A stretch of 64,000 nt of DNA from NCBI GenBank assembly GCA_038496445.1, contig JALMLS010000577.1, positions 744,001 through 808,000 on the forward strand, read 5' to 3'. Every line of letters begins with the position of its first letter. The first letter of the stretch is position 1. Positions 28,717 through 61,310 of the stretch are shown piece after piece. The translations under genes were made by a program, and so were the position numbers. The DNA comes from Trichosphaerium sp. ATCC 40318. Lineage: Eukaryota; Protista; Tubulinea. Below the pieces are notes generated by a model. It saw only the letters and a program-made list of their open reading frames with translations. It was not told the origin of the DNA and did no database searches.

Positions 28717-28856
28717 TCACTTTTTGGTTCTAGCTCAGTTGGTTGATCGCTGGGCTCTCAACTGTACAATCGATGTATCCACACTCTTTTGTGTACCTCA
28801 ACAGTTTTTGTATTTCGTACGTGATGTTAACAGTAGCTCAATGAGGTGAATGAAAG
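28717..28856 (+). mobile_element. tRNA-Lys-derived dispersed element (SINE-like or Pol III ncRNA), copy 1
   Basis: TAGCTCAGTTGGTTGATCGCTGGGCTCTCAACTGTACAATCGATGTATCCACACTC aligns without gaps to the tRNA-Lys at 50082 and is similar to 60743-60868. Confidence 0.65.
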
Positions 28857-29439
28857 CGCATTTGTTTTGCGCCAAATGTATTTCTTGGCTGGTACCACAA
28901 CATTGTACTAAATGTTTTACCTAGCATAGCAATGTGTACAAACTGAACGCCAACGTAATAAAAAGTAACTTTGATGCACGTGCTCAGTTGCCAAAGCAAT
29001 GAGCAACATAAGCACCAACAACACGTTATGATTTAACAATGGTTTCAATGATACATCAAAAGAGAGTCATGGACTAGATTCTTCCTGGATCCCTGCATTG
29101 GTAATGTATATCATTTGCCATTACGGAGAAGGTGAACAGCTTGGTTAAGTACTTAAGTGATAGCAAGTTAAAAGAATCATTGCAACCTTCTTTAATTTGT
29201 GCAAGTGATTACATACTTTTTTTTAAGTATTGGCGAAATAAACTTTCCCGTACTGTTTATTCAGTAACCTCTTAGCCTCTTTGTAGGGAAATGATAAACT
29301 TTCTAAAGGAAGGTCAAGACGACTTGGAATGCAACAACGGGCTTGTTAATTGCCTGGTGAGGTATGCAGACGAGGAATTGATGACAACTGATGAATTTAT
29401 TCTATGACATTTACCTTCAAAACAACTACTTCACTTAAC

Positions 29440-31719
29440 TTATATTTTAGGTTCGAATAACAAATCACGTGCACAGAATTTAGGTTTTGAAGCAAGATGA
29501 TGTGAGCTACAAAACTCAAGTTCCATTGAATTCGGTTCATTTGTTTCTGTCCATTCGAAGTTTTGTATATACGATGCAACAGCCCTATATACAAGAGATG
29601 TAGCTATTCTCTCTCCAGGACACTGACGTGGGCCTCGCCTAACAACGTACCAATTAGAAAAAAAGTGTTTGACCTTGTTTTTTGTACCCAAAAGGAAGTA
29701 CTTTGTTAGGTACTGGGTTATCCCATCTATCTGGATCAAATTTGAATACGTTTTCCCAACCTGCATTATGACATTCATATTGGTGAAGGAAATATACAAT
29801 TGACTATAGGTATGTAAGCGCAGGTATCAGCGAACAAAACATTGAAAATTAAAGCGAAAAGTTTGATTGTTCAAACTTCTAGCTTAAACTTTGACGATAA
29901 ACCGAAGTTTAAGACGCACATCTTTAGGAACAGTATATCCACCAATTTTGAAATCATCGCTTGCTTTATGGGCAATATAGAGAGGGGCTATTGGTGCTAT
30001 TCTGAACACTTCTTGAACAACGTTTCTAAGATACTGAATATTTTGCAAGTCCTACATCAGGGTTAATATTCGTTTGATGTGTAGTTAAAAATACCTTTAT
30101 TGGAACATTTATAGCATCAATATCACCTATTGCATCTCGTAGCTTTTGTTGCATATCTAAATTTTTAGCCAGAAGAGCGAGTGTGCTATATCAACAGTTA
30201 GTAAAAAAATTCAAACTTTATTTTGTTTAAAAATATAAACTTGTTGGTGTACATTTGAATAGCGTTGGCGCTTGTATCGTATCCTCCCAGTATTAATTCT
30301 TGTATATGAACTATCAATTCCCCGTCGCTGATGGAAGGCCTCTCTCTTAGTATAATATCGATGTAATGACGTGGAGGTTTGGTAGAATCTGAACTGGAAC
30401 GAATTTTTTTAAGTAGTCTTGTTAATTGTTCGTCTCTCGCTGTTGTTTTACCAAGAAGATCGTTAAGCTACAAGAAAAGTTAACAAAGAAAATATAAGTG
30501 TAAAAACTTGGTGGCTTTCAGTCCTTTTACAGGTACAGTCACAACTTGCCAGCTGAAATATGTTTTAGGTCAACAGTTTACTTTCTTTGATGAGTTCAAA
30601 AAGATTTGTGTACGTACACGTGATTTATCAAAGTAAGCAAGGTACGGTAATAAATCTTGTAGGAAAGGCACAGCTATTGCTTCTATAATAACTTGGAAAA
30701 CAGGTAAAAGAGTTGCTAAATCCTTATCAACATGATTATACCCTCTTTCATTAAATAAAACGCCAGTTATCATATTAAATGTAAGGCCCGTTGATATATC
30801 TTCACCGCTTACGAAAGTCTTTGTTGATGCACACTTTTTCACTTGAGTGATTACATCATAAAGTTCGCTTGTGATGATACTGTTAACTCTCTATATTACG
30901 TTAACAAAAACACATGAAATACACGTAGGATATCTTGAGATATAGTAAAGAATGTTCCATTCAACGTACTTGAAAGCCATCACCAGTTGTTATAAATGAT
31001 TTCATAAGAGCTCGGTATTTCTTGTGTGAGTCGGTGTAGTCACAAAAAGCGATACCTAAACCGTATTAATGTCACGTGAACTGTAAAAACCAACCGGCTT
31101 CTGGAGCTGGTAAAACCATTGTTTGCAAACCAATCAATCCATCTGAAGGCCTACATAGTTAATTAACCAAATCACGTGCTCAACGCAGAATTATCAATCC
31201 AGCAATCACAACACAAAGTGTTACCGTTAGAGGACGTTGAGCATGTAGTTCGCTCCATACCTATCCGAAAGAACAGCTCTATGCTTCGTCAAAGCGATGC
31301 TCATAAGATCAGGATCACCAATAAACACTATCTACGCAAGGAGGTTAATTCTAGTACTAAACCGGTTTGAAGGTTTTCTATCTACAATTTCTTCAGTTCA
31401 AGAAAAAACGTCTTTTTCCAACTTAGTTACAGTAAATCGTACTGTTTTTGTTCCAAATTTCATGCTGTAAATACCACCTAACGCCTTAGCGTATTTCATA
31501 GCCGTACTAAGCCATACAAAATTAGAAAGAAATCGATACTTTATTTTAACGGACGTACGTAACCATTTGCTTCGGGTCAGTCCATAAATGAAGGTGACCT
31601 ACGATAGGAAGAATCAACGGAGAAGGTGGGAGATTTCTCGCTTTATGTCTCCAGTTCTTGTAAACGGTCGTTAAAACGAATGCCACTAGAAACAATAGTA
31701 TTGTTACAGCTAAAATCAT
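29440..31719 (-). CDS. Cytochrome P450 (ER-anchored)
   Basis: N-terminal TM followed by LPPSPLILPIVGHLH; I-helix LILGGYDTS; ExxR as QEVFR; PDRW; heme motif GPRQCPG. Confidence 0.93.
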
Positions 31720-31992
31720 CGTTCCTGTGGACGCTAGTTTAAATAAAACTTATACTGATTTGGTATAACTTAAGCCATTTATTATGTGAACTGTTATTTG
31801 GCCAGTTCAATCAAAGTTTATTTTGGGTTCTTCTTTAGGTAACTTTATTGTCAAAACGTTTGTGTTCATTGAGTTTCTTTCTCAGTAGTGTACTTTTTTC
31901 AGCTTTCTATTGCCGTTCAATCAAATAGCACAACCCAATGCGATCATCTTTTTCAGCTTATTTTCCTTAATAAGGTGCAGCACAAACCAATA

Positions 31993-32776
31993 TTAAGCAC
32001 GTGCGAATGCCCGTTTGTACATCAACAGATTCTTCTCTTGCATTTTATTCTTTATCAATGCAATACCATTAGTTTTAAAACTTTGCTCCTCTTTGTACCC
32101 GCAAGGTAACGCTACTATTATTATAAGACGCACACCACTTGAGATAGCTTCACAACAGCAAAATAAAATGGCGTACAACTGTCTCAGAGATCTCTGCGCG
32201 CTACTTTTGTTACACGTGATGCCACTAAATGAAGGTCGGGCTTGAGTTCAATAGCAACAATATGTTTATAGAGTAACTAGGGAACAGTCAAAAGAGTAAA
32301 AGCGCTGGTGGAGTCTAATGGAAATCATACCTCGTCATCTCCTGTAGACAGCAGTACAATGCGGCTGCATTCGCGTACAAGCACAGTTTGGTCATTTCGT
32401 CGCTGTTTCCAGAAGATTTGAACTGCTGATAGCCCGGAAGTCTTTTTTGTTACAGTTTCAACCCATCTAATTGTAGTTTGAGCGTCGTGTTAGTGTTTAG
32501 TGGGAATTACTTGTCTCTGTTTTCAGCTCTACGCAAAAACGGATGGCTAGAGCGTAATCTACTCATAGACTGCGTATGAACGTAGAATTTGAATCCCACT
32601 TTTTCTGTACTGCGCCACCATTTTATAATTAACTCATTACGCATCATTAGCGTGTTTATGAGCGATTGCCAGATATAACAAACCCTTGAAGCTACATTGT
32701 AAAACGATATTGGTAGCTCCTTTATTATTAGCTCCTGTAACTCAACAGGTAAACGAGGCGTTGTATTTACTGCCAT
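31993..32776 (-). CDS. F-box protein
   Basis: RLPVELQELIIKELPISFYNVASRVCYIWQSLI is a typical F-box motif. Downstream exons are spliced. Confidence 0.7.
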
Positions 32777-33112
32777 AGCGTCATAATTATGAGTCACAAC
32801 CGTTAAGTACAAGGCGTGATTATTCTGGCACAAGCAAACTGACTTTTAAGTTTCTTGAGTTTTCACTTCAGCAAGTTTTCATAAAGACAAATTACAACGT
32901 ACGAGTACTATCATTATACCATTAGCAGCACTAGAAGATACGAAGTTTTGTGTTGGTCCTGTGAAACAGGTTCACCTTCAGAAGGTACATTACTTGATGG
33001 ATACAGTCTGGCAAAGGTGTTTGATCAGGTTCTGGCTATTCAGTTTCATCTGCTTTTGAATCCCACATGTACTGTAAACCCTTTCAAAATTTATTGGGTG
33101 CAATACCGATGT

Positions 33113-34884
33113 TTATTTTGGGCAGTCTGGGTTACAATTGATATCTGTGCATGTATCAACATAACGAAGTTGAGAAGATCGTGAAAAGAACCAGTCTCCA
33201 AGAACTGTAGCAAATGTCTTGCCGTTGATATGAATAGAATTAAATAAATCGGTATCTTCAACCTGAATAAAAGGTAAGCAATAAAGAATCACGTGTTTCC
33301 AAGCGACATAATATTGGAATTTAATGAGAAAACGATATTTATGTACGTACTTCATGTTTGTAGCAGTTTGGAGAGAAAACCTGTGTCTGGCTTTTTAACA
33401 ATGTATCCATTGTAATTCTGAACTTTTTAACAAATTCGAGTTGCACTGGGTTGTTCAAGTCATGTATGCCATCAAATCCATTGTTAGCTGCGTCTGTTTG
33501 AAACTCGTGATAGATTGTGTCTTTCAATACAAGTCAGTACGTTGCTAAAGAAAAGAAACCAAGATACCTGTTTTTATAAAAGGATAGGCGTATTGAGCAT
33601 GGAAGCATTTCCATTCTTCTCCTTTATAGTGATCCATACAATCTTGGTTGTAAATAACATGCCAATTGCTCAACAAATCTTGAGCGCACATACGAAATCT
33701 GCCACAAAAAAGTTTTTTAGAGAAGCGAAAAAGAAATATGAAAATTACTAACGTAAATGAAGTGTCGTTGTATGATGGGATATCAAGAAACCATCCAGCA
33801 TCCACAAAGGCTTTATACTTTATACTACTTTGTATAGGTTTAAGCAACTCGTATACATAGTCAGCATTACTAAAACCATGTAAACTTAATGTTGAGTAAC
33901 TCTAAATTCTTGTTTCTTTTTTCCAATCAGAAAAACAAGGTTCTTAATGAACAGTATTGGGTTAGGTGTACCTTATAGTGCCAACTCCACCAGCCGAATC
34001 ACCTGTGAGTAGCACCTTTTTGACAATAAGTTAGGACACTGTTCGGAGGAGAATATTGCGTACTTCGGTTGCTGTTCTAATTGAAGGCGTTTGCACGTTA
34101 AGCAAGTGATTTATCAATGATTTGACAACATCTTTTCCTCTGAAAACCCAACCATCTAACCGTACTTAACGAGATTTTATTGAAAGAGAGAAAAATAAGC
34201 TTATCCACGTGGAAGCGTCGAAAGAAACTTCTACAGATATTTCCCCTTTTGTCCTTTTATCCTGGTACGTACTTGTTTCTGGGGAAGCATTTCTAGTGCC
34301 AGCATGTGAATCCGAAGTGCAGTACCATAGATACACTTGATTTGCGTTGTAAAAATCAGGATTAATTGTAGCATTCGAAGACAAGATTCCACCTACGTTA
34401 GAAGATAGTTTAGCCGCCCAGTACGCTCTAAAAACAATATAATTACTAACCGTGCTTTGATCCTACAATTGTTACAGTGTCATTCATAGTAGGAGCGAGG
34501 AACTTGTTCGACATATATTTTGGTGAATTTTTCCATCTCTGCTTACAACTTTCAACGTCCCAGCACCATCCACCACCTCCATGTGTTTTTAGTTATCGCG
34601 AAAAACGTTCGTTAGTGATTTATACTCACCTTGGAGTCTTATCACCCATCTGTTAGCACCAGAACCAAAGCCTTCACGGAAATAGAAGCTATAGTAGTTA
34701 AACACGTGTATTTAGGATCAACAAGGTTTGATTAGTACCCTGCTGGCGTTCCATCGTTACATGGAGCTTCATCTACTGGAAGATAAGTCAAATGAAGCAA
34801 TCTATCGTCGTAAGGCGATTTTGTCGCATTCACAGTTTGAACAATGACAAAAAAGACACAAAAACTAAGAAATACAGCTTTCAT
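33113..34884 (-). CDS. Pectin acetylesterase/Notum-family secreted hydrolase
   Basis: Signal peptide; APCNDGTPAG, GGGWCWD, NPDFYNANQVYLWYCTSDSHAG, LLTGDSAGG (catalytic Ser), DAGWFLD, WKCF, NCYKHE. Confidence 0.92.
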
Positions 34885-35287
34885 TGTACTTGTGGTTGTT
34901 TTTGACCTATTCTGCCTTAATCACTTATGCAAGACACTTTAAGCTACTTTCGAACACCCCACTCCCTTGTGCTGCTATTCTTTATCATGACAGTCCATTC
35001 ATATTTCTTGTCTTTGGTTGTGTTGATGACAGTATCTTGGCGTGCACAATTTTCCTTGATTAACATCAGTGACGACGAAGGTATAGGATACTAGGTTGGT
35101 GCTTCATCCAAACTGTTGTGTGGTACATAAGAATCCCAAAGCGAACAACACCTTATCCTTTATTATTCTATTTCAGCCTGGAAAGATGTTTACTTATGGA
35201 AAGCAAAACGTTTGTAAACGTATCTCAACATCTTTTTTATTATTTAGACAATACTTTGCTTTGGTTACATTACGCTTTTTTTGGAAC

Positions 35288-37480
35288 TTACTTTTTGTTT
35301 GGGTGAATAAAATGAACGTCCTTCAAGTCTTTCTTGTTGATTAATGCAAAACTTTTATCACTTTTACGTTTTATGCGAGAACAAGAGTACTTTCCATCTT
35401 CATAATGATAAACTGTTTGAGCGAACAAGTCCTTCATAATAGCTACAAGAAAATTTAGAACAAAACTCACAATCACGTGATTGTTTCAGAAAGAAAACAT
35501 TCGTTTCTAGTGAAGAAAAATGTTACCTTCTTTGTTCTTCAAGTCAATATCATTGAACTCATCCGGATCAGGCGTCCCTCCGGCCACAGAAAGAACAATC
35601 TCTGGAGCCTCAAGTGTGAACTCTTCATCGGTATCGCTGATAACTACCTTGACACCTGTACTTTTCGCAACAACTATTGCAACAGCTGTTGCAACTTGTT
35701 TTGAAATAGAGATAGTAACATTATCACTCATATCAACCTACAAAATAAATAGTTAGAACTAAACGTTTTCGAAAAAAAAATTATAACGCACTTGTATAGT
35801 GTCTGCGCTTCCGCTGTTATTTAGTATACAATCTTTACAATGTACTAACTCTACGGCAGCGATTGTACCAACCTAGATATTGTTATTAGCATAGTTAAGG
35901 TACTAACGGAACTCGAGGAATTTCCACATGAAATAAATAAAAAAGTTGAAGTTTTGTTTCGGCTCGGCTTACCAGAGAGATAGTGCAATTTGTACATTTG
36001 TCAACAAGTGTACGAGTTACTTTTTTTGTTAGGTTGACTTTTGTATCTTTACAGTCAAGTATGTTCACAGTTTGTTGCATTTTTCCAGCAAAAGTGCAGT
36101 CTTCGTTCTATAACATATAACAATTAGTTTTTTCTTGTCTGATATCCGGTTGACGTACGTTCTTGTTTTTGATTGTATGTATGCGATTGTACACAGTCAA
36201 AAGGTTCAAAAATCCATCTTGTTTAGCTGCAACATGTGCTTGTTGTATAACTGATTCAGGTAGTTTTGGTTTTAAAGGAGCAAAGCTTGATACTTGTGAG
36301 TACGGCCTGCCTAAAATACTATGTAAGCATGACTGTCGTACACTTTGGATTACGCACCTGCTTGCGCAAAAAGGTTTCTGACTCTGTGACGTATAGATTT
36401 TGGATTATCTGCTGGCTTAACACCTAGAAAGCGGAAACTTAGCCAACTCATACAAAACTAAAAATTGCTGTAAGTTTGCTATCACATACCACGTGCTGTA
36501 AAACTATCACGTGTTTGTAATAGTATGTACATTGATTCCGAACCAAATGCAAAACGGGAATGTGTTGATGGATAAATTGGGCTGAATGTAGTGATGTACC
36601 TTAAAAATCACGTGTTAGAGTAAAAATTAAAAAAGGCAAAAGTAAAACAAGAGAAAGATGGCGTACCACTTGCTACCCATAAAAGTAAAGCCCCAACCTA
36701 TGACTTTAGTGAATCATGTGATACTTCTAGTGTACAAAAAAAAATACACTAAAGTTGTGTAAAGTTACCTGGAGCTTTCATGAGCGCTGTAATATCAAGG
36801 TCTTCACCTTTTTTAGGATCATTTTGCGATAACGCTTTTAGTACACGCCTAAGTGTTTCAAAAGTATTATCTTCGCTATCCCACATTGGTTTATGAGCTA
36901 TACATATAGCGAAGCCATCAAAGTAAGCTGTTCTGCGCATACTAGGGTTTTGATTTAGCAAAAAGTTAAACCGCGTATCGTTGTAGTTTTGTACCGTTTC
37001 TCTGGCGGTTCTTTGCCGTAGTGTTCGAGTTCTTTTGTATGAAACGCAACAAGCCCCGGTATAACCTTTTTAGCTATTTCTTCTTCTAGAGAAGCTGTAG
37101 AGAGGTCCAAATGCTCTTCAGGGAAGAAAACGTTCGCTTTCTTTGCGAAAGGGCATTGTGTACCTGTACAAACAGTTAGTATTGGTTTTAAACCGCAGTA
37201 TACCAACCTTGTCTAATTGGTTCGAAACCTGACTCAATACTTGTCTGTTTACTCTCCATTAGTGTTATTGCTTGTGTTGGTGTGTTTTTTGTCGAAATGC
37301 GGCACTAACAACAGAAGTACTACTTTTAGCAAAATCTGTATGAATTTCATCGAAATTTTTTGGCACGATGGTTTGCTGAATTAGGACTTCAATCAATTCT
37401 ATTGTGCGTCTGAATATCACGCAATACGCGATTATGTACTGCACAAGTTTAAAGCGAACTACAACGAAATTACAGTTCAT
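35288..37480 (-). CDS. Fusion protein: YqcI/YcgG-like domain plus C-CAP/cofactor-C beta-helix
   Basis: In-frame splicing gives QCPFAKKA...FDGF...RRVLKALSQNDP...GWGFTFMGSKWYITTFSPIYPSTHSRFAF...YILLQTRDSF...IRHRVRNLFAQAGRPY, then QTVNILDCKDTKVNL..KVTRTLVDKCTNCTI...IAAVELVHC...TIQVDMSDNVTI. Start uncertain. Confidence 0.7.
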
Positions 37481-37723
37481 ACTTTTACTGTACTTACAAC
37501 CTACACGACATTGTACAAAAGTTGTACCATTTTATGCTACTTGAATTACCATACTGGTATTTTACATCCAGGTGTAAGTACTAGGAGCCACGTTTGGAGT
37601 ACGTAACGAGGCAAACTACGGTCCTAAGCCAAAGGTGGTCCAGTGATTCACTGAATAACAAAGTGACACATTGTGACACTTGATTGACTTACAATAACAC
37701 TGTAAAGGGCAATGAATCATTTG

Positions 37724-43984: not shown

Positions 43985-46337
<2,353 letters not shown>

Positions 46338-46713: not shown

Positions 46714-49349
46714 CTAAGAACCAAACCATGATCTGACTTTACTAATAATTGGCCTCTGATGTAATTTGTTAGCTTTAATCGTGTAACAATATTAATTGGT
46801 TCCTTACCCTAGTTCGCACATCGTTCGTATTTATAATAACTGAAAGAGTAGGTGATACATTAAGTGTCAGATGTAAAGGCTCTCGGTTATACATGGTAAG
46901 GGTTTCGGATTGATCGAGACTCTTGATGTTGTTGGCAACAACCACTGTAAAAAAAAATTAATAATGAATTTGATTGAGGCGCTTTTGACTTACTGGCATG
47001 ATTCTCAGCATTTGAAATAAGCGACTAATATGCATAAGGAAAGTAAAAGATTAAATCACACATATTTATAACATACCTCCTGCTCAAGCCAAACAGTGTT
47101 ACCACAAGCAAACATATTAGGATGATTCTAAAAACATTAACAAAAAACCAAGAAACCCGAAAGACGAATGTAGACAAATACACATCAAGGTATTAAATTG
47201 CATAAAATAGAGGATACGTACTTGAACTTGTAAGTAATCATTGACTTTAATATGTCCCAGATTATTCAAACAGTCAGGCATGTTTTTTTCCAAATATGCT
47301 GTATTTGGTTTAAAACCAACACAAGTAATAACAAGATCAGCAGGTATTTTTGTTTCTACAAGTAATTAATTAGCGATCAAACCAAGTAACGTAAGAAACA
47401 AAGACTTACTGATATCAGTTTCTGCAAACTTTAGAGAGTTATAGTACCGCGTGATACTCTGACCAAGGATGACATTGCAGTTATCTATTCAAGAAAAAAA
47501 ATAAGATTAAAGATTGGCTATGAAACACGTACGTCTCTTCAAATACTGTAAAACAATCTTTCCAGCATCTCGCGGCAACCTGTGTACTAACGTAGGAGAC
47601 CGAGATATGAGCGTTATTTTTTTCGCAGGGAAGGCAATAGCTACTTTGGCAGCGACTACAACAAGTTAGTTTGAAACAAACATTAATTTAAAACACACCC
47701 TCCACACCAATCAGACCTCCTCCAACAATTAAAACTGACTTACAATCTTCTTCAGCAATTCTAGACCGCACTTTGGACATTTCTAAGGTAATAAGTACAG
47801 GACTGAATAAAATGTTGAGTTCTTACCTTCAAAATCCATACAGTTTACAACACGGTCACCAGTTATGGTGTCTGGTATGTTACATCGTGATCCTGTAGCT
47901 AGAACCAAGTACTATGTAATTTAAGGAGAAGCACACTTAGCGGTTATTCGCACGTCAAAAGGTATAGCGGCCATGAGACGTCCATTTGAAATGAGTAAGC
48001 GCTCATCTTTTATACTCACAAGTTCTGCTTGTGTAAATTTCCCATTTTTTAAAACCTGTCACTTTTAAAATCACGTGATAATATTTTTCAACATACCATA
48101 TCAAGATCAGCTTGTACTTCGTTGGCTCGAGATGGTGTTGAAATAAGTGCGGGCAGTAGGGGTTTATATTCAAAGAAAGGGCTTATTATTGTTAATGAAT
48201 AAACAAAAAGTATGCACATCAACAAAATTTTAATGTTCCCTATGAGACTTGAACTCACAACCTTCTGTGTATTAGACAGATGCTCTGACCGATTGAGCTA
48301 AGAGAACTTACTGGTATATTTACTGTTATTGCGGCAAAGCGGCCGAGAGTGGAGTCAAGGTAAACACGTTTTTCAAAAAAAAAAAAGGAAAAAATATCGT
48401 CGATGAATAAGACGACGTATTACTGCATTCTTCAATGGACACATACCTCTTGTCAACTAGTGTGACATCAAAAAAATCATCTAGTAATTTAGCAACCATA
48501 CACCCACCATATCCTCCACCAACGACGACAACCTTTTTTTTTTCGACAAATTGATAAATGTGCCTTCCACCTGTAAGACGAAAACCATTAATAATGTTCT
48601 GGCACGCAATATTCGTATTGCAGAAACGCGAAACAAGTGTCAATACGCACCCACTTGGAAGAATTCTTCACCAGTTGGCTTTTTGAGCCTTCCACTTTCT
48701 GCCATAGCCTCGCAAATCAGTATAGATTCTTTTCTTGATACATTTAGATTGCTTTTTAGCCATTCCATAGCAATCGACGCTAAACTATGTTAAAATGAAT
48801 TGTCTTTCTGGCAATTCGCCTGAAGGATGGCGTAAGTACCCGTAAAACAGTTTGGGTAAGTTCTCATATTGTGCGTGACTTCTTTCCTCTTGAAACCAGT
48901 TACAGAATCTCTCACGCGCCGTATTAGGGACCCCATTGCCTGTACGCTATTATTTTAAACTACAACTTATCTAGTACCCGTGGCGTAGCGAAATACACTT
49001 CATAGTTAGGTCTACCTGCGTTTCTAACCATCCGAAGCAACGTTTGGCACACCAGCTGGCAAATAAACCTTAATATTGTAAATCGCCTAAACTACTAGTG
49101 AGAGTAGTATTGAAGGTACCTATCGGCCGGATTGGTCAAAAAATCAATAATCATGCGCCATAACGCTTCAGGGAGTATTGCAAGTCCTTCAGTCTGCACT
49201 ATGGTATTCTCCATCACACCAGAGTTTCTATAACGGCGTGTGAATCGAGGCGACTGTTGGTTTTCCCCAAATTGAGAGATTTCAGGCATAGGTTCACGTG
49301 CTTCTCTTCCCGGGCCAATTCTCATTACTGGTACAGAGGTGTAATACAT
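46714..49349 (-). CDS. F-box + DEP domain + FSP1/AMID(AIFM2)-like FAD/NAD(P)H oxidoreductase
   Basis: F-box LAILPEALWRMIIDFL...CQLVC; DEP THNMRTYPNCFTASIAMEWL...SRKESILICEAMAESG...HIYQF; Rossmann motifs VVVVGGGYGG, YLVLATGS, LIVGGGLIGVE, ADLVITCVGFKPNT. Confidence 0.82.
48234..48307 (-). tRNA. trnI-AAU: tRNA-Ile(AAT), intronic
   Basis: GTTCTCT-TA-GCTC..GAGC-A-TCTGT CTAATAC ACAGA-AGGTT-GTGAG TTCAAGT CTCAT-AGGGAAC-A. All four stems fold, with two G-U pairs. Confidence 0.8.
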
Positions 49350-49738
49350 TGTAGATACAAGCTGACCTTGGTTTGCAGTCCTTATCCACGTTTGTACCGC
49401 TTCCTTGTGTCCGCCAATTAGAAAAACGGTTGATCTGTTCTCTTTTTTAATGTATGTTTACTAAATAGCGTAGTAACCGAAGGTACCCTCGTTCACTGAC
49501 GTCAGTTTGTTGGCGAGCAGTTAACTCAGTTCAAAAAATGCGAGTTTTCATTAATGGCAGTACCAAAAAATGTAGAAAGTATGTAATTAACAAACGAAGC
49601 ATTTATAAGTAAGTAACACAATGCCACTATTATAGTGTAGCAGTATAAGCTTGTACAATAGAAGTGTAGCGTCACAATAAACAAATACTTTTTATGAAGT
49701 TTAGTTTGCATACTTTACCAACTGAGCTGTAGAAAAAA

Positions 49739-49811
49739 CTCCCGACGAGGGTCTCGATCCCTCGACCGTACGGTTAAGAGCCGTACGCTCTACCAACTGA
49801 GCTAGCCGGGA
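49739..49811 (-). tRNA. trnK-CUU: tRNA-Lys(CTT), copy 1
   Basis: Identical to 50082-50154 on the opposite strand; followed by a T6 terminator. Confidence 0.92.
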
Positions 49812-50081: not shown

Positions 50082-50154
50082 TCCCGGCTAGCTCAGTTGG
50101 TAGAGCGTACGGCTCTTAACCGTACGGTCGAGGGATCGAGACCCTCGTCGGGAG
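50082..50154 (+). tRNA. trnK-CUU: tRNA-Lys(CTT), copy 2
   Basis: TCCCGGC TA GCTC AGTTGGTA GAGC G TACGG CTCTTAA CCGTA CGGTC GAGGG ATCGAGA CCCTC GTCGGGA G, then TTTTTT. Confidence 0.92.
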
Positions 50155-50636
50155 TTTTTTCTACAGCTCAGTTGGTAAAGTATGCAAACTAAACTTCATA
50201 AAAAGTATTTGTTTATTGTGACGCTACACTATTATACACTTATACTGTTACGCGCTTTATTTGTTACATATTCTCCTCTAATTTTGTTTACCATTTATCG
50301 CGTTAACGCTTTATTTTGCGTTTACAACGCCAGTTCTGTTCTACCTGAACTGCCAGCCACATTGAATGCCTCAAAACGCTTCTCGTTGTCCATAAATGCT
50401 TTTTTATGGCCACCTACAGGTACCAACGCTTATTTATAGGTATAATATATGTACGTGCCTCTAGCGCTATTTGGCGTAACGCAGTTTACTGTGCGTATTT
50501 ATTCGTTGGCCGCAACCTTAGCGTACCTGTGATAGCAGTTATATTACCCGGTAATAGTCACGTGTCACAATTTGTACTCTTACCAAACGTAGTACGAATA
50601 CATAAAATGCACTAAGTCAACTTGACTAAACGTTGT

Positions 50637-51889: not shown

Positions 51890-53290
51890 TTATGCTTCTT
51901 CCTTTGGTTGTAGTCTCAAGTTGTTCGTTACACAATGATTTCCTCCATTTGATGTACTGTTGTACCATGTCTTCGCGTGCTTTGGAGGTCTGATAGTTGA
52001 GAAAATCATTCCTTTGAAGTCTGCCAAAAGTGTATGTTCATAACCGCCTATATTTGATGGTAATGGCGTTGCATAGTACAAACGGGATCCCTGTGTGTAT
52101 ACTATTCTATCTGATTGATCTTTCCATGTGTTTGTGCTCTTTATCAGCGCTAGAGACATAAAAATTAAACTACTTTTTTACCTTTAATTTTATCAAAAAG
52201 AGTAAGCTTACGTTCATCCACTAGTCTATATCTCCAATTCCACAACCCATTCTTTATTGGAGCTTGTTTAAAGCGCTTGTTATTTATCGTAACAAAAGAA
52301 GGTACAGGCCTTGGAGTAGGATCATTGCCTAAAAGAATAATAAGCAACTAATTGATGACTTTTGATAACACGTGCCTACAATAGCCTGTGCTAAATACAA
52401 GTGAAGTTTATAGTTAGGGGCGGAACTAACATAACAAAGGTTAGCATGCGAAGCTCAAAAAGTCAATGCCTTACGCAAAATCAAAGTGTCCACCGCCTCT
52501 CATTGACCAATGTGCTTGAGGCCAGAACCCTACTGCAGTGAAATATGGTAATCGCGATACAGCCGTCCAATTCATAAGAGGATCTGAGTGTTTACGGATA
52601 AAATAAACAAAGTATTCACCATCTGGTGATATGTCACAGTAGTCAGGTCTTATTTTACCCTAAAAACATAATCAATTTCGAACAACTGTCAGTTCTGTCA
52701 AGCGTACACTGAACCACTGACCCAAGTGTAAAGTGTCTTTTTTTGTATCCCATTTCACTAAGCGCCAGTGATAGCGAGTTCTTCCGTGGCCTCTAATGAG
52801 AATCGCGGCCTGTCAGGCATAAATGTCAGTATGAGCGAGTTTGTTGATATTCCACGCGGAGCGTCGGGTATGGCGCACGATTGGAGCGTTCTTGGCGAAA
52901 TAAATCCATTGTCTGCAGTCTTTGCCATGAAGATCACCAGGCGTTGTAGCTTCTAACGTTTGATGGTGCAGGAGTTGGTAAACTTCCAAATATACAAATC
53001 CTTTTGTGTTTTTTGTGTAATCCTTTGGGCCTATTAATTACATTGTAACACGCACTAATTAAATGTTGGCACGTACCTGTGTAGATTTCTTGCCAGTTTG
53101 GCCACCTACGTTCTACTTGACGCTTCCATATCGCTTGAGAGCCCATAATATGTATGTAGAAACGCCAACTAACAGTAGAAGCTACAAACAAGGACGCTAG
53201 GTCACATTTTACCAAAACCTTTTCTAAAGCGTCTTCATTCAAGCTGTTTATGATACCCTCCTCTCGTAGGCCAGTGGTAAGGTTTCCCAT
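51890..53290 (-). CDS. F-box protein fused to a bacterial-type uncharacterised beta domain
   Basis: F-box INSLNEDALEKVL...ASTVSWRF. Spliced C-terminal part: FAKNAPIAAILIRG..RLVKWDTKKDTLHLGQWFSGKIRPDYCDISPDGEYFVYF...WTAVSRLPYFTAVGFWP...GGGHF...LLADFKGMIFSTIRPPKHAKTW. Confidence 0.72.
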
Positions 53291-53411
53291 TAATTTAAAC
53301 GCGTTTGTTTTGCTTTAAAAGGAAAGAAATTTCAAATATTTTTACAAAATGATTTAAAAATAAAGTTCGTAAGGTTTTATTTGTGCTGTACAGTAATGGT
53401 TTTATTGTTGT

Positions 53412-54231
53412 TTAAAAGGAGCGCTTATCTTTTGGCTGTGGTACTTGAATAGCATGGTAATGAACTCTCTACAGAAAAACAGTTAACAAACATTTTTAAC
53501 ACATTGATGAAAAAAGCGTTCTATGACTTCTCACCTCGTCATTTTTTAGCGCTGCTATTTTTTCCTTTGCGTCAACTTGGTTGCGGTGCTCTGCACGTAA
53601 TTTAAACAAGTACGTGTGTTCTGTAAACGTCAGTTAGTTTTTTTTCTTTCATAATTGCTATAAAAACGCACCTATGCTCCCTACTTGACCAAGGTTATGA
53701 AATCCCTGTCATTTGTGAGTTAAATGTTCTACTTTACAGAAGTTTTTGTAAACTAACCTTCTCTCTCGCAAATTCATGTGGGTCGGTGTCTGGGTGTAAT
53801 TTAACTGCGTGGTGGGCGTGCAGATCCAATGGTTTGTCGTCATCGTCTTAATTCAACGTCAACAAAGTGGTGTAATTAATATACCACGCACCGGTGAAAA
53901 CAGAGCCGTCGGCGTTACGTTGTACTGGTGGTTCGGCATTTGCGTAGAAATCCTCAGTGGAGCCCTCAGAATATTCTGCAGGTGTGTTTTTGGAGTAGAA
54001 ATCCTCTGCTGACGTATTTTCTTCTTCTTTGTGCTCCGCTGGGGTGTTTGTTGAATAAAAGTCCTCTGCTGACGTGTCGTCATCTTTATATTGTGTGGGC
54101 GTGTTCTGAGCGTAAAAATCCTCAGCTTGATTGGAACCTTTTATTTATCAGTTAAAAGTCACGCTTTATATCGTACATAGCACTACGCTTAAAGCACACA
54201 GTAATAGGAGACTAAATAATGCGCTCGACAT
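53412..54231 (-). CDS. Secreted stand-alone peptidase S8 (furin/kexin) prodomain protein with acidic repeats
   Basis: Signal peptide MSSALFSLLLLCALSVVLC; four (S/T/A)EDFY-type repeats; HAVKLHPDTDPHEFARE|GFHNLGQVGS|..EHTYLFK...RVHYHAIQVPQPKDKRSF then stop. Confidence 0.65.
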
Positions 54232-54359
54232 GATGAAAAGCGGAAAATACAATAATCAAACTTAAAATTGCCTTCCCGTTTAAGTTCGTGAATTGAATCA
54301 CGTGACTCCGCACTTTGTGCAATTGAAAATTGAGAGAAGAAATAATTTACAACACTATA

Positions 54360-56117
54360 TTACATAAGGTTATTTACAGCCAAGTGTAACCATCTACCAG
54401 CAAGCGTTAGCAAGAAAGTGTTAAAAAAACGTAGCTGTACCTTTGCGATGATTTCTTATTTAAGCTATTGAATCGATGCCATTGCCACTTGTATTCAGGA
54501 TATAGGAACTGTAACGCATTTGGATAGTACGATACCATACCTTTTCCTCCATATGCAATCAATTGAGTTGAGGACAATCGATACCTTAAAAAAATCAATA
54601 TCAAAATACCGCTAATAAAACTAACCAGTCTTCAGGTTTTGTAATCGCTGATACTGTTTTAATTGACTCTAAGAACGTCATTTGATTTTCGGTATTTCTC
54701 CAATAGTCATTAGGCAATTTGGTAGGTCTATAATCGAATCTATCAAGCTCCCAATAAAACTTAGGAAACATAGTTAAAAGTGCTTGGCGCATTGATCCAT
54801 GCCTGTTTTTATAAGGTTAATCAAGGCTTTCGGATGTAATGAATGTTTCGACTTACATTTGTAGTATACGATATCCACTATTATCATTAATGTTATTGCG
54901 AGATACTTCATGCCAATCGTCAAGAGACTTAACATTAAGACGTTCAGAAATTGTGTCAAATACTTTTTTTTGATTTTCAACTTTTGTCAAATACCCAGAT
55001 GGTACATTACTGCCTCAAGACTATAAGTAGATGATGGTTTATATATGGTCATACGTTAGAAGCCAAGGTTTCCATACATAATTGGGGTATATTGCTAATA
55101 GAGTACGATAGAGTGAGGCATCATACCTAAAGCATGTCAACAAACCATCATAAAAAGTTAACATACAAAATTAATACTTTTGCTGCGCCTTCGTTCAAAG
55201 ATGTCATTGAGACATTATACCATTCAGACATGGTTTTGACGTTCAAAGATCTTGCTACATCTTCCATTGTACGCTTTTGATTCGAAAGGCTTTGCCAGAA
55301 GCGACTTGGAACAGTACTATGAAGCTATGTAAACGACGGATTGTAATGTAAAGTAGTACCTAAAAAATGCGTGTTCCCACTTGTGATTGGGAAACAAGCA
55401 TCCCAGGGCACGGGATAATGATCCACCGTATCTTGGAGCCAGTTAACCTTTACTAAATAGTGTACAAGGAGCACAGTACGATTGTAAAAAACCTCCACAG
55501 TGGAATGCATAAATGTCTTCTTTGGAATATTGATACCTTGTGGTGTTGTTAATACGTTTACAGAGTTTGAGAGTTCAATACCAATCGTTTAATTGTTTGA
55601 CACCAAGCGCTGATGCAATATCGTTCAAAGCACCTCTTCTATTTTCTTCACTGTCCCAGCACCCATTCGCTATAGTTCTGATATGTTAGCTGTTGATTAG
55701 ACTATTCATGAGCGTACTTGAACTGCCATGGTTTCCAGTTGTGCGTAGGATAGGTATTGGGTAGATAGAGCGAAAGGGAGCCTGATGATTGGCTAAAAAG
55801 GTGTAAGCGCTACATTGACATTTTTTTTTACCCTATCGTCAACGAATCGCGTTGTTCTCGTTGTAGCTTGTCGTTACTAAAGGAATACCACTCATCTAAA
55901 TGACAAATGCGATATTTTGATCCAACACGCTCAAAAAATCCCTTTGCGTATTCAGCTTGCTGCGCAGGGAGATTAGTCTTGAGGTAGAGGATTGTTGTAA
56001 CGTACTTTTATGTACATAAGCACAAGCGCTGTAACTTCATGCCTTTCTTCACAAGTAAGTATTTGAACCAATGAATAAAAACTGTGAAAATAACTGACTT
56101 AGCCTACTAAAATGCAT
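54360..56117 (-). CDS. Trp-rich tandem-repeat protein (FW....Q..F...I....I....DWY...YP...W..W.F repeats); start uncertain
   Basis: At least five repeats, e.g. YWRNTENQMTFLESIKTVSAITKPEDW, FWQSLSNQKRTMEDVARSLNVKTMSEWY, LYPEYKWQWHRF. Confidence 0.65.
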
Positions 56118-56161
56118 TGCAATTTTTTGTGAATACAACGTCATATCAATAAGAATAAGCC

Positions 56162-56255
56162 TGCAAAAGGCACCTCCCACAAGGCCCGTCAAGCGCCAGT
56201 GTGCACTCTCTGGTAAGGTTAACGGGTGTCATGATGACACGTGGTCTGCTATCCA
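56162..56255 (-). ncRNA. Candidate structured small RNA of unknown class
   Basis: GC-rich intergenic island with nested stems CCCGTTAA/TTGACGGG, CCAG/CTGG, GTGTCA/TGACAC and CCAC/GTGG, followed by TTTT. Confidence 0.3.
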
Positions 56256-56367
56256 CAAAAACATGGAATTCAGAATAGAAATTGAAAATTCATTTATTTC
56301 GTTTCTATAAAAAAACTCAACTGTTTAACAACGTCACCATACGTTCGTTAAAGTAAAGACGGCGCTG

Positions 56368-59300
56368 ATGGAACCAAAGGAGACAAATAAGCCAAAAGTA
56401 CATTGACAAAACACAATAACACTTGTAGTAATAGTATAGGTGGTAAAAGTATCCCTTGATGATCTTACATCATCAAATACGACCTCTGACAATAATAACG
56501 CTCAAAAGCCTCACAAAAAACGCTCAAAACGCAGCAGAGGCCAAATGTACGCGCTAGAGACATATAATTTTAAAAACAAATAACTTGCATTGGAATTACG
56601 CTCTAACGCAATTATTTCAGCCAATACACAAAGCCTACGCGACGTAGTAGATCAAGAGGCAGAGGAAGAGCGCGAAGAGGTGGAAGAGGTAAAGGTGGAT
56701 CAAAACGGAAGCAACAGAATCATCCAAAGCAAGAACAAGCCCCAGAGCAGAAAAGAAATACGGCAAAGAAAAATGGGCAAAGAGTCGCACCAAGCCCAAA
56801 AGGCAAAGGGCGGACTAGAAAAGCGCTTTACACCGAATTATTGGATAAAACTACAGCTGAAAAGCTTATTAAGGTGATTTCTCCATAAAAACCTGAGTTT
56901 GGATCTGACATTCGTGTAGGAAGGCAAATTAGTTGTAGCTGACGCTCTACGCATAAATGCTTACAATAGAGAAGAGGCATACGCTACAGTTGAAGGATAC
57001 AAGCAAGATGTATTGATAGAAGGCATGATAGATCAAAACAGAGCCATGGAAGGCGATATGGTTGTACGTTATTTAATACCCCAAAACCTTGTTGCAACAA
57101 AACCCTACCACTTGTTATTGGCCTCCTAGCTGTGTTGCTCCATGTCAAAAAACTAAAACCTCTCAGAGACTTTTTGCTTTGCATTGTACTAGAACCTTTA
57201 CTGATGTTGTGTTTTTTAGGCTATTAAGATGAAACCGAAAGAGGAATGGAAGGTTTTGTCTGCTAAAAAGGTAGACGAAACTAATAATACAGAAGAGCTA
57301 CCTCAACTTGATGCGGCTGCTGAGGAGAAGATGATACAAGCGATGATACGATTAGCAAACGGCAAAAAAGTGTCAGAAGAAGAAGCCGAGAACTCTCCAG
57401 TTTTGGATTCTGATGATACGAGTGATGGCGTAGATGTATCTCACACGGAGGATAAAGGTAAAGAAGAGGTAGAACAAGACGTTGAAGGCAAGGAAAGTGA
57501 AGAAAAAAGAAAAATTGTAGTGAATACAGACGCTGCTAATAGAGTAATCAAAGACGGTATTGATGAGGTGTTACCAGCTTATTCGCCTAAATTACCTATG
57601 CCTAAACGTAAACACAACCCAGAACACTTTGAATTAGAGCAACCAGAACCTATAAGAAGATCTGTAGTGACAAAATCGAATATTACAAGTGCAACTAAAG
57701 AAGATAAAAAACAAGAAAAAAAAGAAGCTGTTGAATTCATAGACGACGAAGAAGATAACTTAAGACCTACAGGAACAGTATGTTATAATTTTGGGTATTC
57801 AAGTATCTAAAATATCATTTTAGGTTGTTGCTATCCTTGAAAGAGCTAACAAGGATCGTGTTTTTGTTGGAAAACTAAAGACTCAAGATAGAAATGGAAA
57901 ACTTCGAGCCAAAGACAAAACAGTTATGTTTTATCCTGAGGACAAGCATCTCCCACGTATGATTGTACAGATTAATGATATTCCTGTTAAGCAAAGAGAT
58001 GCTGAGTTGTTCAAAACTCATATTGTTGCATGCAAGGTAAGGAGATACGCTCAAGTTTTAGTTAGTTATTGCGAAGCAGCAGAATCTCTTCATCTCTAAC
58101 TTTCTTTATTGCGTTTGTTTAATTCATTATTAGTTCTCACACTGGCCTACTGGTCTACGTTTACCATATGCAAAGTTTGAAAGAGTTATTGGGGAAGCTG
58201 GAACTGTAGAAACTGAAACAAAATCATTACTTCAAACAAATAATGTTGATGATAGAGACTTTCATCCAAGCGCAATTGCAGGGATACCTGATAAATGTAC
58301 TATTACAGAAAAGGATCTTAGCGAACGTAGAGACTTGAGAGAATATCGTATATTCACTATTGATCCACCTACAGCCCGAGACTTGGATGACGCTTTATCT
58401 TGCAAAGCGCTTGACAATGGAAACTTTGAGATTGGTGTACACATCGCTGATGTGTCTCATTACGTTCGTGAAGGATCTGAGCTTGATACTATCGCTGCTT
58501 CAAGAAGTACAACAGTATACCTTGTTCAACAAGTTGTACCTATGCTTCCACGCCTTCTGTGTGAGAAGCTATGTAGTTTGAACGAGTTAGTTGATAGATA
58601 CGCTTTCTCTGTCATTTGGGAAATCACACCTGAAGGCGAGATTGTAGAACAGTGGATAGGAAAAACAGGTACGCATTATCACTTTACGAGAACAACATAT
58701 TATTTGTTGTTGTAAGCGAGAAAGAGATTCTTTGGTTGCCCTTTTTCTTTTTTTGGTTTTTTGAAAACGAACTTGTTTGTACTGCTTCTATTTGGTGTTG
58801 AGGCCTTTTTAATGTTTGATTATGATCTAATTTCGATATAGTTATCAATTCTTGTGCTCGTTTGAGTTACAATGACGCACAAAAAGTTATCGATGGTGAA
58901 GAAGATGCAAGACAAGCTATTGAAGCAAAAAAACCTTCGCATCCTGTTGATGATATAATTTCTGATATTAAGACATTACATAAGATTGCAAAACTATTAC
59001 GGTCTAAAAGATTCGATAGTGGAGCTTTAACTTTTAACAGAGTACGTCCAAACAATCCACAAAAAGAAGCCAAAAACATTTATAAGCTTTTCTACTTTTC
59101 TTGCTTTTTTTCTCTTTAACATAACTTCTTGGTGCCTTTTCTTTGATGATGTGTTGTATACTTTTGGGTTTTAACGCTCACATAGTTTAAAATATCTTTC
59201 GAATTAAACGAAGATCAAAAACCTGTTGGCATTAATTTGTACAAAACAAAAACAGCAAATCATCTTGTTGAAGAGTTTATGTTACTTGCAAATGCGCAAG

Positions 59301-60629
59301 TTGCTCAATTTATATCTGAGAAGCTACCACAGCTATCTCTTCTAAGGAGACACCAATCTCCAAAGATTCGTAAATGGAACGAATTCGTATTGGTACACTT
59401 TTTGTTTATTATTGTGTTTACACACTAAAATACAATTTAGTGGGCTAAAGCTATCGGCGTGCACATGCCAGAATTGCCAAAAGCAAAACCTTGGAGAGCA
59501 GCTCTAGAAAAATTAGATGAACGTGTCCGCTGCATTGTCAATGCTGAAGCAGTACGATCAATGCATTCAGCAGAGTACGCCTTAAAAACAAAAATGTCGA
59601 AATAGTTCAAGTTTCTTTGTCTCGTTTAGTTTGCACGTGATCTTCTCACAATATTTTTGTAGATATTTCTGCACCTGTGACTTTTCAGATGAAAAGGAAT
59701 ACTGGCATTACGCTCTGAATATGCCGTTCTACACTCATTTCACTTCTCCTATTCGTAGGTATCCTGATTTGGTAGTTCATAGACTTCTACTTGCCGCTCT
59801 GAGCGGTAAGAGGCCAAGTCTAGATACTACTAGGCTTAAAGCGATAACAAAGCATTCAAATCAGAAGAAGAGTAATGCTAAGCGGGCTTCAGATAGAAGC
59901 GATGAATGTGCGTTCGTAAACTCTTCAGAACTGTTTTTTATTTCATATGCTAATACTTTTCTAGTATTCTTTCATCAGTGGCTTGATGCCCATCCAACAA
60001 GAAGTACTTGTTTGGTAACTGGTATTGGCAAGAAGTCTTTCCGAGGTATATCATTAGAGTTTGGTGAAGAGGCAAAGATTTTCTATGTACGGAGTTTTTT
60101 CTTCTTAACTTGTGTGTAAATAGATTTTGTTATTAATTGCTTTCTTAGGAAGATATTGTTGGTCTCGTAAATCTAAAACCTGAGCTATATATTAAAGATG
60201 GCCTAAAGCACGTTGTTCTAACTTTCGAAGGTCGCGAGGCCATGACATTAGGTACCAGTTTCTAAAGCATAACAATGATATTTATTGGTTTTTTAGCTGC
60301 ACTTCAAGAGTTTGTTGTCGAGTTTAGGTACAACCGAAAAACCATGCAAGTATGCTATGAATTACTACTGCCGCCACTACTTGATAAAACCTTAAAAGAT
60401 CAACCAGAAACAGGTACACAAAGAAAAGAAAAACTCAACCAAATGCTTTGTGTTTCTGTACCCAAACTTGGCTAACAATTTGTCTGTAGCACGTGTTGTG
60501 AGGGGCGGAAATAATGGAGGATCAAATAGAACACCAAGAAAGAAAAAACGACCAGCGGAACCACGGGATCATATTGTAGTGGGATCAAAAGTACCACATA
60601 CTCAGGAACTGGAAGTTCTCAACGACTAA
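56368..60629 (+). CDS. DIS3L2: DIS3-like exonuclease 2 (RNase II/RNB family, no PIN domain)
   Basis: [93 protein letters not shown]. Confidence 0.93.
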
Positions 60630-60742
60630 CCAAAAAAAAAAAACCAACAAAAAAAAAGTAAAAATTGTAATTAAATTAATTGTAATTCATCACAGCTGTA
60701 ATAAAATAACATCATTACTATGAAGCTACCAAAGATTCCATC

Positions 60743-60868
60743 CTTTTATCCGTCATTGAGCTATTGTTGACAAAAATCACTTTGACGGGTACACAAAGTG
60801 AGTGTGGATACATCAACCGTACAAGTGAGAGCTATTAGATCAACCAACTGAGCTAGAACCAAAAGTGA
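60743..60868 (-). mobile_element. tRNA-Lys-derived dispersed element (SINE-like or Pol III ncRNA), copy 2
   Basis: Minus strand TCACTTTTGGTTCTAGCTCAGTTGGTTGATCTAATAGCTCTCACTTGTACGGTTGATGTATCCACACTC...GTCAACAATAGCTCAATGA matches 28717-28856. Confidence 0.65.
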
Positions 60869-61310
60869 CAGGATAGAGCTATTGTTGTTTCTGCTGAGAA
60901 CATCACTGCATTTTCTGATGTAACGAATAGCTTTGTCATTGGCGGTAAATAAACATCAATAAACCGGTGCATTACAAAAGATCCGCGCAAATTTTACGTT
61001 GCAGTATTGGAAATAGTTTGAACTTTCAGAATAAGAGAAACTTATCCATTTTGGGATTCTGAGTTAAAACTAGGTTCCGAACTCCGAAAACCGAAATCTA
61101 AACAAACTTAATAGTCTAAAATACCTCAAGCCATACTAAGTTTAGTCAGAAAAACCAAAAAGGTTGCGCGTTGGTTCAAAACAAACTATTTTCAGAAAAA
61201 AACACAATTTCTATTCCACTTGATCAACAATCACAAGCTCGTCTTTGATACCTTAGAGTGGTTTTCGTACATTATGAACTAATTTGACACAGTTTCAAAA
61301 AATTGTCACA

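What the first reader, a model, noticed from the sequence alone, without database searches (positions are those of the whole stretch)
28717..60887. Dispersed element family derived from this genome's tRNA-Lys(CTT): candidate new SINE or Pol III ncRNA
Seen in sequence: two elements of about 130-140 bp (28717-28856 +, 60743-60868 -) align without gaps to the tRNA-Lys at 50082. tRNA: TAGCTCAGTTGGT AGAGCG TACGG CTCTTAA CCGTA CGGTC GAGGG ATCGAGA CCCTC. Copy 1: TAGCTCAGTTGGT TGATCG CTGGG CTCTCAA CTGTA CAATC GATGT ATCCACA CTCTT. Copy 2: TAGCTCAGTTGGT TGATCT AATAG CTCTCAC TTGTA CGGTT GATGT ATCCACA CTCAC. The copies share changes absent from the tRNA (TGATC, anticodon CTT to CTC, GATGTATCCACACTC). They also share a 5' TCACTTTTGGTTC and a 3' tail (TTTGTGTACC...TTTTTG...GTYAACARTAGCTCAATGA). 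The A-box is perfectly kept while the cloverleaf stems are lost. Copy 2 carries a 12-bp direct repeat GAGCTATTGTTG (60758-60769 and 60876-60887). Inference: the element spread as its own lineage after leaving the tRNA. Two copies in 64 kb suggest many more genome-wide.
Basis: partly seen in the sequence, partly recalled or inferred. Interest (0 to 1): 0.75.

Follow-up and report, generated by a model that had tools for sequence, protein, structure and literature searches.

The report
Small local family of tRNA-Lys relics
The two look-alikes of a lysine transfer-RNA gene are real, but they belong to a family of only seven places that all lie near the real lysine tRNA genes of this amoeba, so they are locally copied gene relics (perhaps still in use) and not a jumping SINE.

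Summary
Observation confirmed; the SINE reading is not supported. Both window elements (28717-28844 +, 60753-60887 -) derive from tRNA-Lys(CTT) and share changes the tRNA lacks. ARAGORN and Rfam call neither a tRNA. Whole-genome pattern and model searches (70 Mb amoeba genome) find 11 copies, about 7 distinct loci once near-identical contigs are merged. All lie on the five contigs that hold every tRNA-Lys(CTT) gene, each within 21 kb of one. All copies share 8 substitutions against the tRNA, so there was one founder. The family-wide unit is about 75 nt: a T-rich leader, an intact A box, a remodelled T-arm block and a T-run. Flanks are unrelated. There is no family-wide target-site duplication, no LINE-like tail and no stable fold. 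One inverted junction, and patch-copied real tRNA-Lys genes, point to short DNA-level duplication. One result hints at function: two copies sit upstream of paralogous P450 genes (dS about 1.1) and are the only alignable non-coding DNA there (82% identical). The core is therefore kept by selection or by gene conversion. Transcription is untested. The window copies are the most decayed members. The scan's first readers noted this family on other pieces of this genome (s1-390802, s1-406661); one follow-up (s1-406669) looked only at what is probably the inverted pair.

The parts
28717..28844 (+). Window copy 1 (w1): leader, tRNA-Lys-derived core, T-run, spacer and shared tail block
   Evidence: model R1 scores 75 bits
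28731..28742 (+). w1 A box, identical to that of tRNA-Lys(CTT)
28772..28790 (+). w1 remodelled T-arm block (28772-28786) followed by T4 (28787-28790)
28825..28844 (+). w1 tail block shared only with w2 (18 of 20 positions); contains a second A-box-like start
   Evidence: 0 of 300 shuffles
60753..60887 (-). Window copy 2 (w2): upstream repeat, leader, core, hairpin, T5 and tail block
   Evidence: R1 scores 72 bits
60844..60855 (-). w2 A box
60800..60814 (-). w2 remodelled T-arm block; the run after it has only three T
60876..60887 (-). w2 upstream copy of the 12-bp direct repeat
60758..60769 (-). w2 downstream copy of the 12-bp direct repeat; lies inside the tail block shared with w1
50082..50154 (+). 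Parent-type tRNA-Lys(CTT) gene
49739..49811 (-). Parent-type tRNA-Lys(CTT) gene; forms an inverted pair with the one at 50082
50155..50190 (+). Conserved tRNA-Lys trailer: T6 followed by a second A-box fragment (50165-50175)
49703..49738 (-). The same trailer behind the other tRNA-Lys gene (A-box fragment 49718-49728)

Best explanation
The two window elements are the most decayed members of a small family of about 75-nt units that arose once from a tRNA-Lys(CTT) gene. A unit keeps the layout of a Pol III gene: a short T-rich leader, an intact A box, a remodelled T-arm block where the B box would be, and a T-run. It has lost the 3' acceptor strand and the T stem, so it cannot be a tRNA. The family did not spread through the genome. 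It was copied as short DNA patches of roughly 100-170 bp inside the two neighbourhoods that hold all tRNA-Lys(CTT) genes, much as the real tRNA-Lys genes there were copied (about 300-bp patches). At least one pair of copies is older than a gene duplication whose silent sites are saturated, yet the core is still 82% identical. I therefore infer that the core is maintained, most likely as a Pol III/TFIIIC-recognised unit. It could give a roughly 70-nt poorly structured tRNA-like RNA, or act as a DNA-level site between genes. Shown: origin, copy number, confinement, boundaries, lack of fold, position next to P450 paralogues. Inferred: DNA-level copying, constraint, Pol III use.
For: One founder: 8 substitutions against tRNA-Lys are shared by all 11 copies. 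A closed family: the pattern search gives 11 exact hits, then 3 intermediate pseudo-tRNAs and 9 tRNA-Lys. Model R1 gives 11 hits at 71-85 bits, then a gap down to 40 bits. The T-arm block occurs nowhere else above the control level. Confinement: all copies lie on C1, C142, C216, C317 and C358, at most 21 kb from a tRNA-Lys(CTT) gene. Flanks of 1 kb on each side are unrelated between loci. Only nearest relatives share 14-70 nt beyond the T-run. DNA-level copying: the inverted pair on C216 has a palindromic junction in the A box. Real tRNA-Lys genes are copied as patches of about 300 bp. Age and constraint: the copies C142:150101 and C216:62554 lie 217 and 546 nt upstream of collinear P450 paralogues. 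P450 exon dS is about 1.08 at 69-76% nucleotide identity. The introns and spacers do not align, but a 98-nt block around the element does, at 78% (core 82%).
Against: No transcript data are available. The B-box position matches the consensus at about 5 of 9 defined bases (my own comparison). No copy folds better than shuffles, and no pair shows compensatory change. Comparisons of near-identical contig pairs show no special constraint on the core. Gene conversion between copies could mimic selection. The window copies have broken D and anticodon stems, and copy 2 has only three T in its run. The dS estimate rests on 95-117 codons.
Confidence: 0.5

Rival explanations
1. These are purely neutral tRNA-Lys pseudogenes. 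One decayed copy was reduplicated by local copying accidents. The copies stay alike only because they are young or exchange sequence by gene conversion. They have no function.
For: The tRNA-to-element changes in the middle region are the three CpG-to-TpG/CpA decays expected of unselected DNA (read directly). An intermediate pseudo-tRNA exists near one locus. Contig-pair comparisons show no extra constraint. There is no stable fold and no covariation. The window copies are degenerate. An earlier follow-up judged what is probably the C216 inverted pair a one-off copying accident.
Against: The two copies upstream of the P450 paralogues keep 82% identity where all other non-coding DNA is unalignable and dS is about 1.1. 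Each of these two copies has its own private changes, which argues against recent conversion. The 13-nt A-box stretch is invariant in all 11 copies.
Confidence: 0.3
2. This is a low-copy tRNA-derived SINE, or a set of retroposed Pol III transcripts. The RNA is reverse-transcribed by a LINE and reinserted.
For: The family-wide homology runs from about 12 nt before the A box to the T-run, which is roughly a Pol III transcript. There is a 12-bp flanking repeat at w2 and a 10-bp one at C142:147428. A 144-bp piece with a 96% copy on C197 was inserted into the T-run of one copy, so short pieces do get inserted at T-runs here. The scan reports a young LINE in this genome (not checked).
Against: There are only 7 loci, all within 21 kb of tRNA-Lys(CTT) genes. 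No LINE or any other sequence shares the tail. The w2 repeat lies in sequence that w1 also has downstream. The 10-bp repeat belongs to another small repeat family. Close relatives share sequence beyond the T-run. No empty site was seen in any contig pair. The element predates an old gene duplication.
Confidence: 0.08
3. These are recognition sites for a sequence-specific DNA-binding or recombination protein that targets tRNA-Lys genes. The conserved part would be the A-box word, not an RNA.
For: The near-palindromic 9-mer at the start of the A box is reiterated 16 times at a period of about 17.5 nt behind a tRNA-Lys pseudogene on C358. It is repeated in every tRNA-Lys trailer. The scan reports a recombinase-type element inserted in a tRNA-Lys gene (not checked).
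Against: The array is unique in the genome. The elements conserve much more than the 9-mer. No binding protein is identified.
Confidence: 0.07

Closest known systems
tRNA-derived SINEs (for example rodent B2/ID, MIR)
   Same: The head derives from a tRNA, has an internal A box and is a short unit. The copies share diagnostic changes that the parent tRNA lacks.
   Different: There are 7 loci rather than hundreds to millions. All are next to the parent gene cluster. There is no LINE-related or A-rich tail, no family-wide target-site duplications and a weakened B box. Copies share flank sequence beyond the terminator.
tRNA pseudogenes and tRNA look-alikes in tRNA gene clusters
   Same: Derived from a neighbouring tRNA gene, unable to fold as a cloverleaf, produced by local duplication, and showing CpG decay.
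   Different: One decayed variant was itself multiplied to 7 loci. It kept the A box and T-run throughout, and it outlasted a gene duplication with saturated silent sites.
BC1 RNA / ID master gene (tRNA-Ala-derived Pol III ncRNA; from general knowledge)
   Same: A tRNA-derived Pol III unit that no longer forms a cloverleaf (BC1's tRNA-like part folds as a hairpin) and is kept as a gene.
   Different: BC1 is a proven, expressed, single master gene with a dispersed SINE progeny. Here expression is untested and there is no dispersed progeny.
Extra-TFIIIC (ETC) sites and tDNA boundary elements of yeasts; ex-B boxes behind Dictyostelium tRNA genes (from general knowledge)
   Same: Partial Pol III promoter pieces lying between Pol II genes or just behind tRNA genes.
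   Different: Those rest on the B box. Here the A box is the perfectly kept part and the B-box position is altered.

Membership tests
SINE (tRNA-derived) | Many dispersed copies across the genome | tested here: not met
   11 copies in about 7 loci on 5 contigs, all at most 21 kb from a tRNA-Lys(CTT) gene
SINE (tRNA-derived) | Internal Pol III promoter with both A and B boxes | tested here: inconclusive
   The A box is intact in the window copies and in most others. The B-box position keeps about 5 of 9 consensus bases (consensus from general knowledge)
SINE (tRNA-derived) | Target-site duplications flanking each copy | tested here: not met
   Only w2 (12 bp) and one other locus (10 bp) have flanking repeats. 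Both are explained otherwise
SINE (tRNA-derived) | 3' tail shared with a partner LINE, or an A-rich or simple-repeat tail | tested here: not met
   The tail query matches only itself in the genome. In the 151-nt query, only positions 8-88 match elsewhere
Functional tRNA gene | Cloverleaf with acceptor stem and T arm; recognised by tRNA models | tested here: not met
   ARAGORN and Rfam RF00005 are negative. There is no 3' acceptor strand. Folds are no better than shuffles
tRNA-derived pseudogene or relic | Sequence descent from a specific tRNA gene without tRNA function | tested here: met
   Gap-free alignment to tRNA-Lys(CTT) with 8 fixed differences. An intermediate form lies nearby
Pol III-transcribed tRNA-derived ncRNA gene (BC1-like) | A discrete transcript and Pol III/TFIIIC occupancy | not testable with these tools
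   No RNA or ChIP data could be reached. Only the anatomy (A box, T-run) and long-term conservation speak for it
ETC / tDNA-type TFIIIC site | B-box-dependent TFIIIC binding without Pol III transcription | not testable with these tools
   The elements are intergenic, but the B-box position is altered

The most novel reading that the evidence does not exclude
A tRNA-Lys-derived unit has been domesticated in this amoeba. It would be a conserved, low-copy Pol III/TFIIIC-recognised element, older than a P450 gene duplication with saturated silent sites. It would work either as a roughly 70-nt acceptor-less tRNA-like RNA or as an A-box-based boundary site between genes. It may be linked to the odd reiteration of A-box words around tRNA-Lys genes.
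Probability: 0.3. Interest if true: 0.55.

Novelty: new member of a known kind. Interest (0 to 1): 0.33.

Why it matters
As a SINE it would have been the first tRNA-derived SINE I am aware of in Amoebozoa, but the evidence rules that reading out. What remains is a modest but clean case of a tRNA gene relic that multiplied locally and seems to have been kept for a long time. It adds to the many rearranged tRNA-like genes that earlier scan notes report for this genome. If the units are transcribed or bound by TFIIIC, they would be a small, tractable example of a tRNA gene turned to another use in a little-studied protist.

Tried and rejected
1. Rfam scan of the window and of ten family loci at E up to 1: only true tRNAs matched.
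2. Exact-pattern scans of metagenome and viral collections for the element, and of metagenomes for the parent tRNA: all blank, so there is no cross-species comparison.
3. The idea that the upstream flank of C142:147428 is a decayed tRNA-Lys 3' half plus trailer: the alignment is no better than shuffles (149 of 500), so I dropped it.
4. Family-wide homology of the 130-140-nt unit: only w1-w2 and the C216 inverted pair share significant downstream sequence. No pair shares upstream sequence beyond the leader.
5. Constraint test on near-identical contig pairs: not informative, because the core is no more conserved than its local flanks.
6. Segmental duplication of the window region: the BTB gene beside the window's tRNA-Lys pair has no paralogue on the other four contigs.
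7. Secondary structure: an alternative long hairpin is 92% paired and the cloverleaf arms 80%, but there is no compensatory change and no energy signal.
I could not inspect the third P450 paralogue on C216, the copy of the 144-bp piece on C197, or the weak hit on C131.
9. A literature search found the Trichosphaerium genome paper (PMC10521059), which does not mention tRNA genes or SINEs. I did not verify the organism's identity myself.
Full report
**What is in the window.**
- ARAGORN and Rfam find three tRNA genes: Ile-AAT at 48234-48307 (-), and an inverted pair of Lys-CTT genes at 49739-49811 (-) and 50082-50154 (+).
- The two reported elements are present. Their tRNA-like part aligns to tRNA-Lys without gaps.
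- They share a leader, an intact A box, a changed D arm, anticodon CTC and a remodelled T-arm block.
- They also share a 20-nt tail block some 35-40 nt further on, matching at 18 of 20 positions (0 of 300 shuffles align as well).
- The 12-bp direct repeat of copy 2 is real.
- Neither element is called a tRNA, and neither folds better than shuffled sequence.
- The observation therefore stands.

**Size and location of the family.**
- The window is C1:744001-808000 of a 70.3-Mb, 642-contig eukaryotic assembly. Earlier notes of this scan call it a marine amoeba, probably Trichosphaerium. I did not check that, but the published genome is of similar size (PMC10521059).
- A 26-nt pattern spanning the A box to the anticodon loop gives exactly 11 hits without mismatch. 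With one mismatch it adds three copies of an intermediate pseudo-tRNA-Lys. With two it adds the nine tRNA-Lys(CTT) genes.
- A sequence-only covariance model of the 74-nt core gives the same 11 at 71-85 bits. It then drops to 40 bits for the tRNA-Lys genes. Only 150 first-look candidates were scored.
- The T-arm block alone occurs nowhere else above the control level.
- Flank comparison merges the 11 copies into about seven loci, because C142, C216, C317 and C358 carry near-identical stretches.
- The seven loci are w1, w2, C142:118171 (with C216:78124 and C358:12940), C142:147428 (with C317:28445), C142:150101 (with C317:25780), C216:62554 and C216:62973.
- Every copy lies on one of the five contigs that hold all tRNA-Lys(CTT) genes, 0.14 to 21 kb from one. 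That zone is at most about 0.6% of the genome.
- This is not the distribution of a SINE.

**Anatomy and descent.**
- All 11 copies share eight substitutions against tRNA-Lys within the tRNA body. The family therefore has a single founder.
- The changes in the middle region are the three CpG decays. The T-arm changes are mostly G-to-T and G-to-C transversions that destroy the T stem.
- The 3' acceptor strand is gone, and a T-run of 3 to 5 bases follows directly.
- Homology across the whole family runs from about 12 nt before the A box to the T-run.
- The A-box stretch of 13 nt is invariant in all copies.
- Only nearest relatives share more. w1 and w2 share the tail. The C216 inverted pair shares 36 nt. 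Two further loci share a borderline 14 nt.
- The window copies are the most diverged members, with broken D and anticodon stems.

**How the family spread.**
- The 1-kb flanks on each side are unrelated between loci.
- The w2 repeat overlaps sequence that w1 also carries downstream. It therefore belongs to the copied unit and is not a target-site duplication.
- The 10-bp repeat at C142:147428 is part of another small repeat, present at about seven dispersed loci.
- The tail of w1 matches nothing else in the genome, so no LINE partner was found.
- C216:62973 begins at a perfect palindrome centred in the A box and is identical in the core to C216:62554, which lies 420 bp away. This is a DNA-level inverted duplication. 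An earlier follow-up in this scan reached the same view of what is probably this pair.
- The real tRNA-Lys genes are themselves copied as patches of about 300 bp with a conserved trailer.
- A 144-bp piece with a 96% copy on C197 sits inside the T-run of C142:118171 but not in its two sister contigs.
- Short-patch DNA copying within the cluster is the simplest mechanism. This is an inference.

**Evidence that the core is maintained.**
- The 2.7 kb between C142:147428 (-) and C142:150101 (+) holds a cytochrome P450 gene on the minus strand.
- Its close paralogues lie on C216 at about 55-57 kb and 60-62 kb.
- C142:150101 and C216:62554 both lie upstream of a P450 start codon in divergent orientation, 217 and 546 nt away. 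The exons are collinear.
- For 95-117 aligned codons, dS is about 1.08 and nucleotide identity 69-76%.
- The introns and the spacer between the start codon and the element do not align.
- The element does align: 98 nt at 78%, with the core at about 82% and private changes in each copy.
- Independent insertion upstream of two paralogues among only seven loci is very unlikely.
- The element was therefore probably present before the duplication. Since then it has changed roughly five times more slowly than silent sites, through selection or gene conversion.

**Evidence against a function.**
- Comparisons of near-identical contig pairs show no extra constraint on the core.
- No structure is supported. 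The best candidate, a long hairpin, is 92% paired but shows no compensatory change and no energy signal.
- No relatives were found outside this genome.
- Expression could not be tested.

**Context in the window.**
- w1 lies between the 3' end of a MORN-repeat gene and the 3' end of a distant P450 gene.
- w2 lies behind an RNB-domain gene.
- The BTB gene next to the window's tRNA-Lys pair has no paralogue on the other four contigs. The C1 neighbourhood is therefore not a simple segmental copy of the others.

**Verdict.**
The claim that the element spread as its own lineage is supported. The claim that it is a dispersed SINE is not.
- Best reading (0.5): a small, locally duplicated family of tRNA-Lys-derived Pol III-type units whose core is maintained.
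- Main rival (0.3): neutral pseudogenes kept alike by gene conversion.
- Interest is moderate to low.

Noticed in passing
L034:1163-1434 (G000:C358:19186-19457): An array of 16 copies of the near-palindromic 9-mer ARCTSAGYT, which is the start of the tRNA-Lys A box. The period is about 17.5 nt with variable spacers. It lies directly behind a 3'-truncated tRNA-Lys(CTT) pseudogene. There are 17 hits against 0.2 expected. It is the only such array in the genome, and TRF misses it.
   Followed up: partly
window 50155-50190 (+) and 49703-49738 (-); L028, L030-L033 downstream of each tRNA-Lys: Every tRNA-Lys(CTT) gene carries a conserved trailer: T6 followed by a second A-box fragment. On C142, C216 and C317 this fragment has become a 16-nt perfect palindrome.
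   Followed up: partly
L014:1561-1704 (G000:C142:118231-118374): A 144-bp insertion lies exactly inside the T-run of one family copy, flanked by T5 and T6. It is absent from the sister contigs C216 and C358. A 96% copy lies at C197:106832-106987. This looks like a templated or retroposed patch.
   Followed up: partly
L015:1619-1694 (G000:C142:147546-147621): A roughly 76-nt repeat with about seven dispersed loci (C474, C120, C110, C179, C116, C92). A related piece directly follows the T-run of the neighbouring family copy. Its identity is unknown.
   Followed up: partly
L023:1498-1560 (G000:C142:122788-122850; also C216:82687 and C358:8382): An intermediate pseudo-tRNA-Lys. It has the family's D-arm and anticodon-stem changes but still has anticodon CTT and most of the T arm. 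It has no terminator.
   Followed up: partly
L022, about 130-190 nt upstream of the family copy (G000:C358, near 13.0-13.1 kb): On this contig the tRNA-Lys gene beside the family copy is chimeric. An element-like 5' part is joined to the true tRNA 3' end and its trailer.
   Followed up: no
L058:1500-1590 (G000:C179:64916 region): A circularly permuted tRNA-Lys(TTT)-like unit (T arm and 3' acceptor, a short linker, then 5' acceptor to anticodon arm) turned up as a weak hit of the family model. Its type matches permuted tRNA-Lys notes already made by this scan.
   Followed up: no
G000:C142:147.9-150.0 kb (L015, L016); G000:C216:55-62 kb: A cytochrome P450 gene is bracketed by two outward-facing family copies. 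Two tandem P450 paralogues lie on C216, of which only the second has a family copy upstream.
   Followed up: partly
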